This document shows, in pieces, positions 1 to 63,964 of a DNA stretch of 64,000 bases. The DNA is taken from the NCBI GenBank assembly GCA_023334545.1, contig JAADVB010000091.1, forward strand, positions 1-64,000, written 5' to 3'. Each line of letters begins with the position of its first letter. The stretch's first letter is position 1. The notes under the pieces are model-generated. The model saw nothing but the letters and a program-made list of their open reading frames with translations. It had not been told where the DNA came from and ran no database searches. The translations under genes were made by a program, and so were the position numbers. Source of the DNA: Salisapilia sapeloensis CBS 127946 (Eukaryota > Protista > Oomycota).

Positions 1-58
1 ATGGTAGAGCGTTCGCTTAGCATGCGAAAGGTACTGGGATCGATACCCAGCTTCTCCA
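1..58 (+). tRNA. tRNA-Ala(AGC), 5' end truncated by the window edge
   Basis: Anticodon arm TTCGC-TTAGCAT-GCGAA (12-28, anticodon AGC). T arm CTGGG-ATCGATA-CCCAG (34-50, eukaryotic Ala-type A54 loop). Acceptor 3' strand CTTCTCC (51-57) and discriminator A58. No encoded CCA. Confidence 0.93.
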
Positions 59-59
59 G

Positions 60-131
60 GCGTGTGTAGTATAGTGGTTAGTACCCTTCGTTGTGGTCGA
101 AGTATCCTCGGTTCGAATCCGGGCACGCGCA
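60..131 (+). tRNA. tRNA-His(GUG); genomic G at position 59 corresponds to G-1
   Basis: Full cloverleaf: acceptor GCGTGTG(60-66)/CACGCGC(124-130), D stem GTAT/GTAC, anticodon arm CTTCG-TTGTGGT-CGAAG (GTG at 93-95), T arm CTCGG-TTCGAAT-CCGGG, discriminator A131. Confidence 0.96.
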
Positions 132-135
132 TTCC

Positions 136-141
136 TTTTTT
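136..141 (+). terminator. RNA polymerase III terminator (T6) after tRNA-His
   Basis: TTTTTT starts 5 nt after the discriminator. There is no T-run between the two tRNAs. Confidence 0.8.
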
Positions 142-423
142 CCTGGGTTTTGTCGTGGCTTACCTTCATTTTGGGAAAGCACATCCATTTTTACTCTATC
201 ATAATGCGCACAGGGAAATACTAGCGAACATTATATCGAGTATATCCACTCAGACGACCTTCGGACAACCTCATATGTCCTCGGTGGACCTTTGGCAATT
301 ATCTACCACAGTAGCGACGACGCCGTGCACGTTTAGTGGCTTCCCCTCCGTCATCTCCTAGTTTCGCACGCTCTACGGACACTTGCTACCCTTTATTCCG
401 TTCTTTTCGTTTAATAAACTGGT

Positions 424-3400
424 ATGGATGCTGGTACTGCTGACGATGGAGCTGTTCGAGTCGCTGTGCGTGTCCGGCCGCTCATCGGGCGGGAGAAAGT
501 GGACCGATGCGACGAATGCGTGTCTGTCGTTGACCAGGACACGCAAGTCGTGATTGGTAAGAACCGATCCTTTACGTATGACTACGTGTTCGGTCAGTAC
601 GCCCAACAGCGGGACGTCTGGAGCTGCGTCGAGCCACTTGTGGACGCTGCGTTCGAAGGCTACAACGCCACTATCTTTGCGTACGGCCAAACTGGATCCG
701 GCAAGACGTTTACCATGGGCAGTGGATCGACTGTCCACCTTCCACCGGAAGACCATGGCATCATCCCACGTGTCATCTCGTACATGTTCGATCAAATCCA
801 GTCGAAAGTGTCGTCTACACCAGAATACTCGGCCGAGCTTCGAGTCCGCTTCCTAGAAATCTATGGCGAGGACATTCGAGACTTGCTCGTGCATCTCGAG
901 TCTACAGGAGAAGGAAAAGTGGGGCTTCGGGAAGGAGAGGGAGGGGAGATCCAAGTCTCAGGCGCGGCTGAAGAGGTCGTCACGGACGCCGACGACTGTC
1001 TAAAGCTTTTAGAACGCGGCACTTTATCTAGAACGACTGGAAGTACACTCATGAACGCGCATTCGAGTCGATCTCACGCCATTTTCACCATCACCATGAC
1101 CCAGCAGACGCCTCTCGTCGGTGGCGAAGAGCAATCGTCGGGGGAAGTCGAGTTCGAGACACGTACGTCTTGCTTCAATTTTGTCGATCTAGCTGGATCC
1201 GAACGTCAGAAGCGTACGCAGGCAGAAGGCAAGCGCTTGAAGGAAGGAATTGAGATCAACAAGGGTTTACTCGCCCTCGGGAACGTCATCAGTGCATTAG
1301 GGGATGAAAAGAAACGAGGCAAAGTGCACGTTCCGTATCGAGACTCCAAGCTCACTCGTATGCTGCAGGATTCCTTAGGTGGCAATAGTCGAACGTTGAT
1401 GCTCACGTGCGTCAGTCCAGCTGACGTCAACTTTGAAGAGAGCTTGAACGCTCTCAAGTACGCCAACCGAGCTCGGAACATCAAGAACAAGGCGGTTGTC
1501 AATCGAGATGAAGCGTCTGCTGCGAACGCGGCGTTAAGACGACAGGTACAGGCTCTGCAGGAAGAGGTCATGCGTCTCCGGCATCCTGGCATGTCAGACG
1601 CTGAGCTGCATGCGTTAGCACCTAGTACCTCGAACGTCGGGTCCGGCGCAGATGTAGATTCCTTTGCTAGTCTCCGGAATCGAGCAGAGAACGCCGAGAG
1701 CGAAGTGACGCGCTTAACATCCGAGATGAAGCGCATCAAGACGCAGATGGACCAAGTGCGTGAAGAGTCGATTGCAGCACAGGCGGAGCGAGACTACTTG
1801 CGCTCCGTCGTCGCGCCAGAGCAACGTGGTGGCGAGGAAGAAGAGGCGGGAAAGAGTCTCGTGAGTGAACACTTGAAGACGATCTATGACTTACAAGAAA
1901 AGCTCCGAGTGGCTGAGTCAGAGAACGAACGAGTGCAGATGGACTTTAGCTCGATGGACGTGCCGTCGTATCTCGATACGAGTGGTAAGGACACGGACGA
2001 ATTGATCGCTCGTGCAGAGCAAGAGATCGCCGACGAGAGTGCCGAGTTGGAAGGACAGGACGCAGATGAGTCGTTTGTGCAGGAAGAGGAGGATCATGAA
2101 CGAGTCTTTTTGAAGCGTCAGGAGCATTTAGGCGAGTCCGTTCGGGACTTAAGTCAAGACATCTCTGTCAAAGAACAGCTCGTGCAGAACCTTCGCGCTC
2201 AGCAAGAGAGTTACGACAAGCTCCGGACGTTCTACGAGAATAAGATGGCGCAGATGGTCGAACAGGTCAAGTCAGCGCAGCAAGATCGAGAGAAACTGCT
2301 GCAGGAGATGCAGATGCTGGAAGGCAAGAGCAAGAAGGACGTTGAGAGCTCTTCTCGCCTGACGAAACTCACGAAAGAGCTCAAGACCAAGGACGAGCAG
2401 CTAAGTACGCTTCGTCGAAAGCAAAGTGAGATGCAAAAGTTCATGGCACAGAAGAAGAAGAGTGAGACGCAGCTACGTGCTTTGGAAGCAGAAGTCACGT
2501 CGATGAAGAGACAAAAGGTTGAGCTCATGCGCAAGATGTCAGCGGAACGAAAGAAGTACGAGGACGAAGCGAAGCGCCGACAGCGGGAGATTGCAGCACT
2601 CAAGCGAGCGCAGCGAAAGGACCAGCAGCAGATCCAACGACTTGGGAATGAAAAGTCCGCGCAGGAACGCGTGCTCAGGCGGAAGATGGAGGAGGCAAAT
2701 GCTGCCAAGCAGCGTCTCAAGCAGCAGCAGCACCTCCAGGCACAAGCTAAGCGGATGAACGCCAAGGTCGGGCGTACGATCCAATCTCAAAGGAAGGAGG
2801 TCGATATGAAGTGGGTGGAGGAAGAGGTGGAGACGAGAGCGAGGGAGCAGCAGAAGCTAGAGCAGCTGCGGACGGAGCGAGAGGAGCTCGGTCGAGAGCT
2901 GGAAGAGCTGTATCTGTTGCATGAAGACGATCCGTCTGCCGATGTAGATGAACGCATTGAGGCGTGTCAGGCGCAGCTAGAGTACAAGGAGGAGCAGATC
3001 TCGAGCACGGAGGACTCTGGCATCCCAGACGCTCGTATCGACCGGACCAAGTCGCTCGAGGACGCTAAGGCGGTCATGCACCGTCTCTTTTCCTCTGCTG
3101 TGAACGCTCGGAAGCAGGCGCAGAGTCAGGAGCAGCACGCAGGCAAGATGGTGTTGGAGCTTAAGGAAGCGCAGGAACAGCTTGAGGTCGAACGCAGTCG
3201 AGCGACGCAGCTGAAGCAAGAGTACGAGCAGTCTCTCCATCGCTTCGTCCAGACTGGATTGGAAAGCGATGCGTCTGGGAACGGAGAGGATCGATCGCAG
3301 CATCTACTAAGCGTGTCGGAAGAACGGAATGATGTGCTCAAGAAGAAGTTTGAAGAGCAGGTGGAAAGAGCCAAGGAAGCGGAGCGTGTGCGAGAAGCCT

Positions 3401-4233
3401 TGTACGATCAGATGATGCTCGAGCAGAGGCAGCTGCGTGCTTGTCAGGATGAAGTGCAGCACCTCAAGGACCAAGTGAAGCGTCTGTCGAGTAAGAGCAA
3501 TCAGCGACAGGAACGCAGTCGTCCAGTGTCATGGGCGAATGAGCTAGAGGAGGACGAGTCGGATGATGCCGACGGACGTAGTGATGAAGGCAGCGTCGCG
3601 ATGGATGACAAGGGCGAGTCGCCGACGCATCATAGTGACGACGGATCGACACAAAAGAGCATCTTCTCTCGTCTTGCGAACCCGAGTAACTTTACTGGCA
3701 TTCATAAGAACAGAGCCAAGGACAGTGTCTCAAAGCGAGAGGTGCTCCAGTCTCGAGCAGACAAGAACCGACAGCGACGGATGAAAGATCGAGGAGGTCG
3801 CGGGCCTGGGACGAGTCGACTTGCAGAGCGACCAGCATCCACCTCGAAAGCGTCAGTGAAGAAACCGACGCAGATGATGGAGGTGCTGGAGAATATGCGA
3901 CGGGAGAATGAAGGAGAGGCGCATGTGTCGGACACTGTGGCGCAGAGGCTGGCGCAAGGGTACGTGACGACGACGAGGCCGGACGACATGGAGATGCCTC
4001 CTCCTGCGCCGTCATCGACGCCAGGACGTTCTCGACTGGCAGGCACGCAGTTCCATAGACGACCGGCGCCACAGCCGAAATCTTCTTCGGCTGGAGAGGA
4101 AGAAGCGTACATGTTTGACGAAGGAGAGGACCCGTTAGTCCATGGACCTCGTCTCGTGGATCAAGTGCGAGACGATTATCGACAGCGTCTGGCGGAAACA
4201 CGATCGACACGAAACGCTCGATCGAGGGGATAA
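424..4233 (+). CDS. Kinesin-4 family (KIF4/KIF21-like) motor protein, intronless, 1269 aa
   Basis: N-terminal motor domain with VRVAVRVRP, P-loop GQTGSGKT, SSRSH, DLAGSER and HVPYRDSKLTRMLQDSLGGNSRT. A long coiled-coil stalk of kinesin-4 type follows. Confidence 0.93.
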   Translation: MDAGTADDGAVRVAVRVRPLIGREKVDRCDECVSVVDQDTQVVIGKNRSFTYDYVFGQYAQQRDVWSCVEPLVDAAFEGYNATIFAYGQTGSGKTFTMGSGSTVHLPPEDHGIIPRVISYMFDQIQSKVSSTPEYSAELRVRFLEIYGEDIRDLLVHLESTGEGKVGLREGEGGEIQVSGAAEEVVTDADDCLKLLERGTLSRTTGSTLMNAHSSRSHAIFTITMTQQTPLVGGEEQSSGEVEFETRTSCFNFVDLAGSERQKRTQAEGKRLKEGIEINKGLLALGNVISALGDEKKRGKVHVPYRDSKLTRMLQDSLGGNSRTLMLTCVSPADVNFEESLNALKYANRARNIKNKAVVNRDEASAANAALRRQVQALQEEVMRLRHPGMSDAELHALAPSTSNVGSGADVDSFASLRNRAENAESEVTRLTSEMKRIKTQMDQVREESIAAQAERDYLRSVVAPEQRGGEEEEAGKSLVSEHLKTIYDLQEKLRVAESENERVQMDFSSMDVPSYLDTSGKDTDELIARAEQEIADESAELEGQDADESFVQEEEDHERVFLKRQEHLGESVRDLSQDISVKEQLVQNLRAQQESYDKLRTFYENKMAQMVEQVKSAQQDREKLLQEMQMLEGKSKKDVESSSRLTKLTKELKTKDEQLSTLRRKQSEMQKFMAQKKKSETQLRALEAEVTSMKRQKVELMRKMSAERKKYEDEAKRRQREIAALKRAQRKDQQQIQRLGNEKSAQERVLRRKMEEANAAKQRLKQQQHLQAQAKRMNAKVGRTIQSQRKEVDMKWVEEEVETRAREQQKLEQLRTEREELGRELEELYLLHEDDPSADVDERIEACQAQLEYKEEQISSTEDSGIPDARIDRTKSLEDAKAVMHRLFSSAVNARKQAQSQEQHAGKMVLELKEAQEQLEVERSRATQLKQEYEQSLHRFVQTGLESDASGNGEDRSQHLLSVSEERNDVLKKKFEEQVERAKEAERVREALYDQMMLEQRQLRACQDEVQHLKDQVKRLSSKSNQRQERSRPVSWANELEEDESDDADGRSDEGSVAMDDKGESPTHHSDDGSTQKSIFSRLANPSNFTGIHKNRAKDSVSKREVLQSRADKNRQRRMKDRGGRGPGTSRLAERPASTSKASVKKPTQMMEVLENMRRENEGEAHVSDTVAQRLAQGYVTTTRPDDMEMPPPAPSSTPGRSRLAGTQFHRRPAPQPKSSSAGEEEAYMFDEGEDPLVHGPRLVDQVRDDYRQRLAETRSTRNARSRG

Positions 4234-63891: not shown

Positions 63892-63964
63892 TGGACACTG
63901 GGGGTATCGATCCCCCTACCTCCCGCATGCGAAGCGGGCGCTCTACCATTTGAGCTAAGCGCCC
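63892..63964 (-). tRNA. tRNA-Ala(CGC)
   Basis: The reverse complement GGGCGCT..AGTGTCC-A has the G3:U70 Ala identity pair. Anticodon arm CCCGC-TTCGCAT-GCGGG, T loop ATCGATA. 73 nt. Confidence 0.95.

What the first reader, a model, noticed from the sequence alone, without database searches (positions are those of the whole stretch)
1..141. tRNA-Ala/tRNA-His dicistron whose 1-nt spacer is the tRNA-His G-1: possible tRNase Z-generated, Thg1-independent histidine identity element
Seen: tRNA-Ala(AGC) ends at discriminator A58, tRNA-His G+1 is position 60, and the only base between them is G59. The only T-run terminator (136-141) follows tRNA-His, so both tRNAs should lie on one Pol III transcript. 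Established: G-1 is the major HisRS identity element. Eukaryotes normally add it post-transcriptionally with Thg1 opposite A73, and A73 is present here. tRNase Z cuts directly 3' of the discriminator and leaves a 5'-phosphate on the downstream piece. The known yeast dimeric pre-tRNAs (Arg-Asp, Ser-Met) have multi-nucleotide spacers. Inference: a single tRNase Z cut would both finish tRNA-Ala and release tRNA-His already starting with pG-1, bypassing RNase P and Thg1. This would be an organelle-like tRNA punctuation mechanism in a nuclear genome.
Basis: partly seen in the sequence, partly recalled or inferred. Interest (0 to 1): 0.82.

Follow-up and report, generated by a model that had tools for sequence, protein, structure and literature searches.

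The report
tRNA-Ala and tRNA-His joined by G
A nuclear alanine-tRNA gene runs straight into a histidine-tRNA gene with one G between them, and that G never changes in 77 diverged copies from public data, so it is probably the extra 5' G that marks histidine tRNA, supplied by the gene rather than added by an enzyme.

Summary
tRNA-Ala(AGC), cut by the window start, ends at A58. G59 is the only spacer. tRNA-His(GUG) spans 60-131 with A73, and the first T-run is at 136-141. The host is an oomycete, judged from its kinesin.

The antisense frame through the pair is open, and its junction codon reads proline only if both His -1 and +1 are G and the spacer is 1 nt. Searches with that frame found 77 distinct spurious ORFs in public assemblies, all with proline. 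The neighbouring acceptor-stem and anticodon-stem residues vary, with compensatory changes. Three further loci confirm Ala-G-His at DNA level, one from a 27% GC genome. Stand-alone tRNA-Ala genes mostly have A or T after the discriminator, and Ala-His pairs with longer spacers have A or T at -1. So the G is selected as part of tRNA-His.

Whether tRNase Z makes the cut, and whether Thg1 is absent, could not be tested. One related stand-alone tRNA-His has T at -1. No RNA 5'-end data exist.

Encoded G-1 with A73 is already known in C. elegans, with an unknown retention mechanism.

The scan had already flagged this pair on at least four other pieces of this genome.

Verdict: real, conserved, apparently undescribed; mechanism plausible but unproven.

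The parts
1..58 (+). 3' 58 nt of tRNA-Ala(AGC), tRNA positions about 15-73; anticodon 19-21, B box 37-47, acceptor 3' strand 51-57, discriminator A58
   Evidence: Rfam tRNA 34.2 bits, truncated at the 5' end by the window start. Full-length homologues are in L008 and L016.
59..59 (+). Single spacer G, at position -1 of tRNA-His; proposed genome-encoded G-1
   Evidence: Sequence. The junction codon is proline in 77 of 77 antisense ORFs. G is also seen at DNA level in L008, L016 and L017.
60..131 (+). tRNA-His(GUG): G+1 at 60, A box 67-77, anticodon 93-95, B box 110-120, discriminator A73 at 131
   Evidence: ARAGORN, Rfam 58.1 bits, cloverleaf fold. Across 5 lineages, 105 of 105 cells pair and 8 of 21 pairs show compensatory change.
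136..141 (+). T6 run, the first Pol III terminator-like signal after the start of tRNA-Ala
   Evidence: Sequence. T4 to T7 runs lie within 1-4 nt of His A73 in L008, L016 and L017 as well.
182..4233 (+). Neighbouring kinesin (KIF21/KIN-4-like) gene; ORF 424-4233, with mRNA contigs reaching back to about 182. Context only, and used to place the organism.
   Evidence: ORF list, RNA-run contigs, and 55% identity to Phytophthora and Globisporangium kinesins.

Best explanation
This is a conserved nuclear two-tRNA gene, tRNA-Ala(AGC)-G-tRNA-His(GUG). There is no terminator between the two halves, so Pol III starting at the Ala promoter must read through to the T-run after His and make a dimeric precursor (inferred). 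The single spacer G is the genome-encoded G-1 identity nucleotide of tRNA-His. With G-1 counted, the two mature sequences abut exactly. One endonucleolytic cut between Ala A73 and the G then finishes the Ala 3' end with a 3'-OH ready for CCA addition, and releases tRNA-His starting with pG-1. The likeliest enzyme is tRNase Z working on the Ala 3' end, as in the human mitochondrial tRNA-His/tRNA-Ser(AGY) junction. RNase P cutting one position upstream would give the same products. On this route tRNA-His needs neither canonical RNase P 5' trimming nor Thg1. Shown here: the gene anatomy and strong purifying selection on the 1-nt G spacer. Inferred: co-transcription, retention of G59 in mature tRNA-His, and the enzyme.
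For: Anatomy is. The same junction occurs in another organism's run, with 1 mismatch over 128 nt. It also occurs in L008, where His differs at about 13 of 72 positions, mostly by compensating changes, and the trailers cannot be aligned. It occurs in L016, a 27% GC genome with His acceptor GCCATCG, and in L017. The antisense-ORF census found 77 distinct ORFs that read His, junction and Ala in one frame. The junction codon is proline in all 77, which means G at -1, G at +1 and a 1-nt spacer. The two adjacent acceptor codons take at least 11 forms and the anticodon stem at least 5. Spacer A, C or T would read Leu, Arg, His or Gln and would still have been retrieved. In the length-limited search there were 30 pair ORFs against 1 stand-alone His ORF. 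The first trailer base of about 92 stand-alone tRNA-Ala ORFs is A or T in 63 and G in at most 22, so the G is not a tRNA-Ala 3'-processing requirement. Pairs with longer spacers have non-G at -1: 5-6 nt with T in marine arrays, and 13-19 nt with inferred A or T. All five tRNA-His sequences read at DNA level look functional. Precedents are C. elegans and B. natans, which have encoded G-1 with A73 and no Thg1, by an unknown retention mechanism. Diatoms lack any Thg1 or TLP. RNase Z makes the 5' end of the abutting human mitochondrial tRNA-Ser(AGY). Scan notes report the same pair on at least 4 other pieces of this genome and no other tight tRNA pair (not checked by me).
Against: There is no direct RNA evidence. 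RNA contigs of this organism do not cover tRNA-His. The 151-nt contig from organism B runs on through T5 and T4 runs, so it looks like DNA or read-through rather than a Pol III primary transcript. A templated G-1 cannot be told from a Thg1-added G in reads. Thg1 presence or absence was not tested. L015 is a stand-alone tRNA-His of nearly the same sequence type as L008, with T at -1 and A73. If it is functional, it needs Thg1 or a HisRS that tolerates a missing G-1. L017 keeps G-His behind a tRNA-Ala that lacks its 5' half and could not be a tRNase Z substrate. In yeast, dimeric precursors are split by RNase P and the upstream trailer is trimmed by Rex1. Yeast nuclear machinery also releases the downstream tRNA intact from an overlapping bicistron. 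G-1 cannot pair with A73, so canonical RNase P would be expected to cut at +1. The taxa behind the 77 ORFs are unknown, only 4 junctions were read as DNA, and many ORFs may be paralogues.
Confidence: 0.55

Rival explanations
1. Conventional pathway. The dimer is cut by RNase P at the canonical site between G59 and G60. The G left on tRNA-Ala is removed as a 1-nt trailer by tRNase Z or a Rex1-like exonuclease. Thg1 then adds G-1 to tRNA-His. On this reading the spacer G is kept for another reason, such as cleavage efficiency at a very tight junction.
For: This is the documented route for yeast dimeric precursors and for an overlapping bicistron expressed in yeast. A73 cannot pair with G-1, so nothing known shifts RNase P. 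The stand-alone tRNA-His with T at -1 in a related lineage suggests a G-adding activity may exist there. Thg1 is widespread in eukaryotes.
Against: It does not explain why the spacer is G in 77 of 77 copies and always exactly 1 nt, while the neighbouring stem bases changed many times. It does not explain why pairs with longer spacers carry A or T at -1. It does not explain why stand-alone tRNA-Ala trailers do not prefer G.
Confidence: 0.28
2. Leaderless start. TFIIIC bound to the tRNA-His A and B boxes directs Pol III to initiate at G59. tRNA-His is then made with pppG-1 and no 5' processing, and the upstream tRNA-Ala is only a neighbour.
For: tRNA-His has near-consensus A and B boxes at 67-77 and 110-120. 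An RNase P-free archaeon uses G-1 from the gene without 5' processing (abstract of PMC10100707). L017 keeps G-His behind a truncated tRNA-Ala.
Against: It gives no reason for the strict abutment to an intact tRNA-Ala in nearly all copies. tRNA-Ala has no terminator of its own, so its transcripts must run into His. Canonical HisRS depends on a 5'-monophosphate.
Confidence: 0.05
3. Chance or decaying juxtaposition with no functional meaning, spread only by duplication within genomes.
For: tRNA genes in oomycetes amplify as tandem units. Copies within one genome are not independent.
Against: The junction is kept across lineages whose tRNA-His differs by many compensated substitutions and whose flanks range from 27% GC to GC-rich.
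Confidence: 0.02

Closest known systems
Genome-encoded G-1 on nuclear tRNA-His in Caenorhabditis elegans (also noted for Bigelowiella natans); Rao and Jackman 2015, PMC4338351
   Same: It is a nuclear tRNA-His gene with G at -1 opposite the eukaryotic A73. G-1 is obtained without Thg1, and the authors state that the retention mechanism is unknown.
   Different: The paper describes no upstream tRNA for the C. elegans genes, and absence of Thg1 is established there. Here the G is the sole spacer to an upstream tRNA-Ala, which suggests a concrete way to retain it. Thg1 status here is unknown.
Human mitochondrial tRNA-His/tRNA-Ser(AGY) junction (Rossmanith 1997; PMC12630138)
   Same: Two tRNAs abut exactly, and RNase Z cutting at the 3' end of the upstream tRNA creates the mature 5' end of the downstream one.
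   Different: That case is an organellar polycistron whose downstream tRNA is a poor RNase P substrate because it lacks a D arm. Here the genes are nuclear Pol III genes, the downstream tRNA is canonical, and the point of the arrangement would be to keep an extra 5' nucleotide.
Dimeric nuclear tRNA genes of yeasts (S. cerevisiae Arg-Asp, S. pombe Ser-Met)
   Same: Two tRNA genes lie head to tail, with one terminator after the second and a dimeric Pol III precursor.
   Different: From my own knowledge, the yeast spacers are several nucleotides long (about 10 and 7). The junction is resolved by RNase P plus Rex1 trimming (PMC3866640). No spacer base ends up in a mature tRNA.
Bacterial and organellar tRNA-His with encoded G-1:C73
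   Same: G-1 is templated and kept during 5' maturation.
   Different: Retention there depends on the G-1:C73 pair shifting RNase P. Here position 73 is A in every copy read, so that mechanism cannot apply.

Membership tests
Eukaryotic dimeric (dicistronic) Pol III tRNA gene | Two complete tRNA genes on the same strand, head to tail | tested here: met
   tRNA-Ala at 1-58 (truncated only by the window edge) and tRNA-His at 60-131. Full-length pairs are in L008 and L016.
Eukaryotic dimeric (dicistronic) Pol III tRNA gene | No terminator between the genes, and a T-run after the second | tested here: met
   There is no T4 run in 1-135, and T6 lies at 136-141. The same layout holds in L008, L016 and L017.
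Eukaryotic dimeric (dicistronic) Pol III tRNA gene | A dimeric precursor RNA is actually made | tested here: inconclusive
   RNA-run contigs of this organism do not cover tRNA-His. The one spanning contig, from organism B, runs past the T-runs and may be DNA.
Genome-encoded G-1 tRNA-His, bacterial type | G at -1 paired with C73, which shifts RNase P | tested here: not met
   G is at -1, but position 73 is A in the window and in L008, L016, L017 and L015.
Genome-encoded G-1 tRNA-His, C. elegans type | G at -1 with A73 in most or all nuclear tRNA-His genes | tested here: met
   G59 and A131 are present here. 77 of 77 pair ORFs imply G at -1. The genome-wide tally for this organism rests on unchecked scan notes.
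Genome-encoded G-1 tRNA-His, C. elegans type | No Thg1 gene in the genome | not tested
The literature search found nothing on Thg1 in oomycetes.
Genome-encoded G-1 tRNA-His, C. elegans type | Mature tRNA-His carries G-1 derived from the template | not testable with these tools
   Reads cannot tell a templated G from an added G. This needs spacer mutants or precursor mapping.
Mitochondrial-type tRNA punctuation (5' end made by RNase Z) | Mature sequences abut with no discarded nucleotide | tested here: met
   If G59 counts as His G-1, Ala A73 and His G-1 are adjacent. The 1-nt spacing is invariant.
Mitochondrial-type tRNA punctuation (5' end made by RNase Z) | Cleavage at the junction is done by RNase Z and not RNase P | not testable with these tools
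   This requires in vitro processing or enzyme depletion.

The most novel reading that the evidence does not exclude
In oomycetes and in several other unidentified eukaryotic lineages, one of them with a 27% GC genome, tRNA-His gets its G-1 identity nucleotide by being hooked 1 nt behind tRNA-Ala. A single tRNase Z cut at the Ala 3' end would then replace both RNase P and Thg1 for tRNA-His. These lineages would have lost or sidelined Thg1. That would answer the open question of how nuclear encoded G-1 opposite A73 can be retained.
Probability: 0.3. Interest if true: 0.9.

Novelty: new variant of a known kind. Interest (0 to 1): 0.78.

Why it matters
G-1 is the main identity mark of histidine tRNA. 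The textbook rule is that bacteria encode it and eukaryotes add it with Thg1. Rao and Jackman (2015) showed that some eukaryotes break this rule, but they left open how an encoded G-1 can survive 5' processing when it cannot pair with A73. An Ala-G-His gene whose single spacer base is invariant across many diverged copies offers a concrete mechanism that can be tested directly. Fusing the tRNA to an upstream tRNA lets one 3'-end cut define the unusual 5' end. If confirmed, it would be the first nuclear case of organelle-style tRNA punctuation with a function in tRNA identity. It would also explain why this one tRNA pair stays tightly linked. A practical point: tRNA annotation pipelines disagree about which gene the junction G belongs to. 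ARAGORN put it in neither gene in the window and L016, and in tRNA-Ala in L008.

Tried and rejected
- **Synteny.** I fetched kinesin orthologue loci from Phytophthora nicotianae, Pythium oligandrum, Saprolegnia parasitica, [Pythium] brassicae and three run or metagenome assemblies. None has tRNA-His. P. oligandrum has six tRNA-Ala(CGC) copies upstream instead.
- **Exact His pattern.** A 32-nt His pattern found nothing in JGI metagenome contigs.
- **Generic junction pattern.** It found nothing in prokaryote genome contigs or viral contigs. In metagenome contigs it gave one true relative (L008) and six dense marine tRNA arrays.
- **Read laying.** Contigs of this organism's RNA runs stop at Ala A58, and they belong to another, stand-alone tRNA-Ala(AGC) copy. 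Run X12 gave only very deep, mismatched tRNA-like fragments and told nothing.
- **Dimer fold.** The minimum-energy fold of the dimer was no better than shuffles (z = -0.6), so I did not use it.
- **Taxon assignment of metagenomic pairs.** Cluster look-up gave no names. L016 has no ORFs. The L015 neighbour is an F-box-like orphan. The L017 ORF gave nothing.
- **Literature.** I found no paper linking Thg1 to oomycetes, no description of an Ala-His dimer, and no hit for the junction sequence. The Jackman 2012 review is not held.

Full report
**1. Observation**

The window opens inside a tRNA. Rfam's tRNA model matches 1-58 as model positions 15-71, truncated at the 5' end by the window edge (34 bits). 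It matches 60-131 as a complete tRNA (58 bits). ARAGORN tRNA-His(GUG).

Read directly, the first tRNA has these features:
- anticodon AGC at 19-21;
- T loop ATCGATA;
- acceptor 3' strand CTTCTCC at 51-57, with T at position 70 for the G3:U70 alanine pair;
- discriminator A58.

G59 is the only base before His G+1 (G60). His ends with discriminator A131. There is no run of four T in 1-135, and T6 lies at 136-141. tRNA-His folds as a cloverleaf with G59 and A131 unpaired.

**2. Organism and setting**

The adjacent ORF (424-4233) is a KIF21/KIN-4-type kinesin. It is about 55% identical to Phytophthora and Globisporangium proteins, 45% to Albugo and about 40% to Saprolegnia and Aphanomyces. No copy of it is in the protein collection. 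The host is therefore an oomycete that is not itself in the database.

RNA-run contigs of the same organism put the kinesin mRNA 5' end at or before about 182.

Scan notes on other pieces of the same genome report the same Ala-G-His pair at least four more times. They report tRNA-His copies at contig ends and no other tight tRNA pair. I could not read those pieces, so these notes remain leads.

**3. Conservation, read as DNA**

- **Organism B.** A 151-nt contig from an RNA run of a second organism covers window 11-138 with one mismatch.
- **L008.** A degenerate junction pattern pulled this metagenome contig. It has a full tRNA-Ala(AGC), one G, and then tRNA-His. tRNA-Ala differs from the window at two compensating positions. 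tRNA-His differs at about 13 of 72 positions, mostly compensating. The trailers do not align, yet the junction CTCCA-G-GCG is identical.
- **L016.** This is a 27% GC contig with no ORFs. It has the same layout with a quite different tRNA-His (acceptor GCCATCG) and a T7 terminator.
- **L017.** It has G-His behind a tRNA-Ala that has lost its 5' half, next to retroelement ORFs.

Across five tRNA-His sequences read as DNA, all 105 stem cells pair. Eight of 21 pairs carry changes on both sides, against a mean of 3.2 in shuffles, and none of 500 shuffles reached the observed value. These are diverged, functional-looking genes.

**4. Conservation, census through spurious ORFs**

The antisense frame through the pair is open. 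In it, the codon CCT (proline) is the reverse complement of Ala A73, G-1 and His G+1.
- Proline means both -1 and +1 are G.
- A spacer of A, C or T would read Leu, Arg, or His/Gln.
- Any spacer length other than 1 (or 1 plus a multiple of 3) would break the frame.

A word-indexed search with this frame returned 30 ORFs spanning His, junction and Ala. A profile search over 1.84 billion representatives, with no length filter, raised the count. In all, 77 distinct ORFs carry the in-frame pair, and all 77 have proline at the junction.

The two codons next to it, which cover His acceptor positions 2-7, take at least 11 forms. The anticodon-stem codons take at least five forms. None of the 77 matches the window's own type, so these are other lineages.

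The retrieval would not have missed other spacer bases, because one residue barely changes the score.

In the length-limited search, where every candidate was listed, there was one His-only ORF against 30 pair ORFs. Stand-alone His ORFs are perhaps three times harder to catch, so pairs still dominate.

**5. Controls**

- About 92 ORFs cover a tRNA-Ala with no tRNA-His next to it. Their implied first trailer base is A (40), T (23), G (12), G or C (10) and C (7). The G is therefore not something tRNA-Ala 3' processing requires.
- An unrelated set of very dense marine tRNA arrays has Ala(CGC)-His spacers of 5-6 nt. Their sequence varies, with T at -1 and A73.
- Four ORFs from another lineage imply Ala-His spacers of 13-19 nt with A or T at -1.

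So G at -1 goes with the 1-nt spacing and with tRNA-His.

**6. What argues against the interpretation**

- L015 is a stand-alone tRNA-His whose body is almost the same as the L008 type. It has T at -1 and A73. If it is expressed and used, it needs Thg1 or a tolerant HisRS. It could instead be an idle copy, like the one C. elegans gene without G-1.
- The truncated tRNA-Ala in L017 could not guide tRNase Z.
- There is no RNA evidence for the dimer. The organism B contig continues through T5 and T4 runs, which a Pol III transcript should not do.
- Yeast resolves its dimers with RNase P and Rex1. Yeast nuclear enzymes also favour the downstream tRNA's 5' end.
- Thg1 status is unknown. The literature has nothing on Thg1 in oomycetes, though it says diatoms and several algae lack any Thg1 or TLP.

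**7. Mechanism**

The invariance of both the base and the spacing is hard to explain unless G59 ends up in a product. The only product that uses a G there is tRNA-His.

With G-1 included, the two mature sequences abut. One cut that leaves a 3'-OH and a 5'-phosphate then matures both ends, and both tRNase Z and RNase P have that chemistry.

I favour tRNase Z for two reasons. Nothing known would shift RNase P when -1 faces A73. And exactly this indirect 5' maturation is established for the human mitochondrial tRNA-His/tRNA-Ser(AGY) junction.

I put about 0.55 on retention of the encoded G by a single junction cut. Of that, I put roughly two thirds on tRNase Z. I put about 0.28 on the conventional route of RNase P plus Thg1.

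**8. Comparison and novelty**

- It works like the C. elegans type of encoded G-1, combined with mitochondrial-style punctuation, inside a yeast-style dimeric Pol III gene.
- It fails the bacterial definition, which needs C73.
- It meets the anatomical features of the other three. The defining biochemical features (dimer RNA, enzyme, no Thg1) are untested.
- I found no description of an Ala-G-His unit.

I class it as a new variant of known kinds. It is of high interest because it makes an openly stated question directly testable.

Noticed in passing
L004, L005, L006, L007, L009, L010 (JGI marine metagenome contigs, e.g. Ga0315318_10001793): These are extremely dense tRNA arrays, with up to 60 tRNA genes in 9.5 kb. 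Nearly all genes are co-oriented, spacers are 2-80 nt, the anticodon set is near-complete and the gene order is conserved between contigs. Ala(CGC)-His there has a 5-6 nt spacer with T at -1. The source organism or virus is unknown.
   Followed up: partly
L002:1516-9636 (Pythium oligandrum, upstream of the kinesin orthologue): Six tandem tRNA-Ala(CGC) genes with a period of about 1.6 kb lie directly upstream of the same kinesin gene that lies downstream of the Ala-His pair in the window. A tRNA-Ala gene next to this kinesin may be an old neighbourhood.
   Followed up: no
L015:3-75 (JGI 3300060893 contig end): A stand-alone tRNA-His with T at -1 and A73. Its anticodon arm, variable loop and T loop are identical to the L008 paired type. 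It is the only exception found to the paired arrangement in that sequence family.
   Followed up: partly
L017:9264-10145: The tRNA-Ala in front of G-His lacks everything 5' of about position 28. An 85-nt tRNA-Ala(AGC) call lies about 670 nt downstream, and two long retroelement ORFs (RVT_1) fill the rest of the contig. This may be a retroelement-disrupted pair.
   Followed up: no
P0260, P0264, P0280, P0306 (database ORFs; DNA not fetched): The antisense ORFs imply tRNA-Ala followed by tRNA-His after 13-19 nt, with A or T at -1, in a lineage whose tRNA-His resembles one of the 1-nt-spacer groups. Ala-His linkage may be older than the 1-nt form.
   Followed up: no
P0256 (database ORF; DNA not fetched): Two tandem stand-alone tRNA-His genes with a metazoan-like acceptor stem. 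G at -1 is implied in at least one copy, so this may be another case of encoded G-1 without an upstream tRNA.
   Followed up: no
window 63892-63964 (minus strand): A tRNA-Ala(CGC) gene lies at the far end of the window. A scan note places a co-oriented tRNA-His about 625 nt beyond the window edge, apparently at the contig end. The contig seems to begin and end in Ala/His tRNA genes, so assemblies of this genome break at these repeats.
   Followed up: no
window 1-58 compared with RNA-run contigs X2 and X5: Another tRNA-Ala(AGC) copy in this genome is identical over 1-58 but is followed by ATCGAATCTTTTAC instead of G-His. It sits inside 1-2 kb contigs of RNA libraries, so not every tRNA-Ala(AGC) gene is fused to tRNA-His.
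   Followed up: partly
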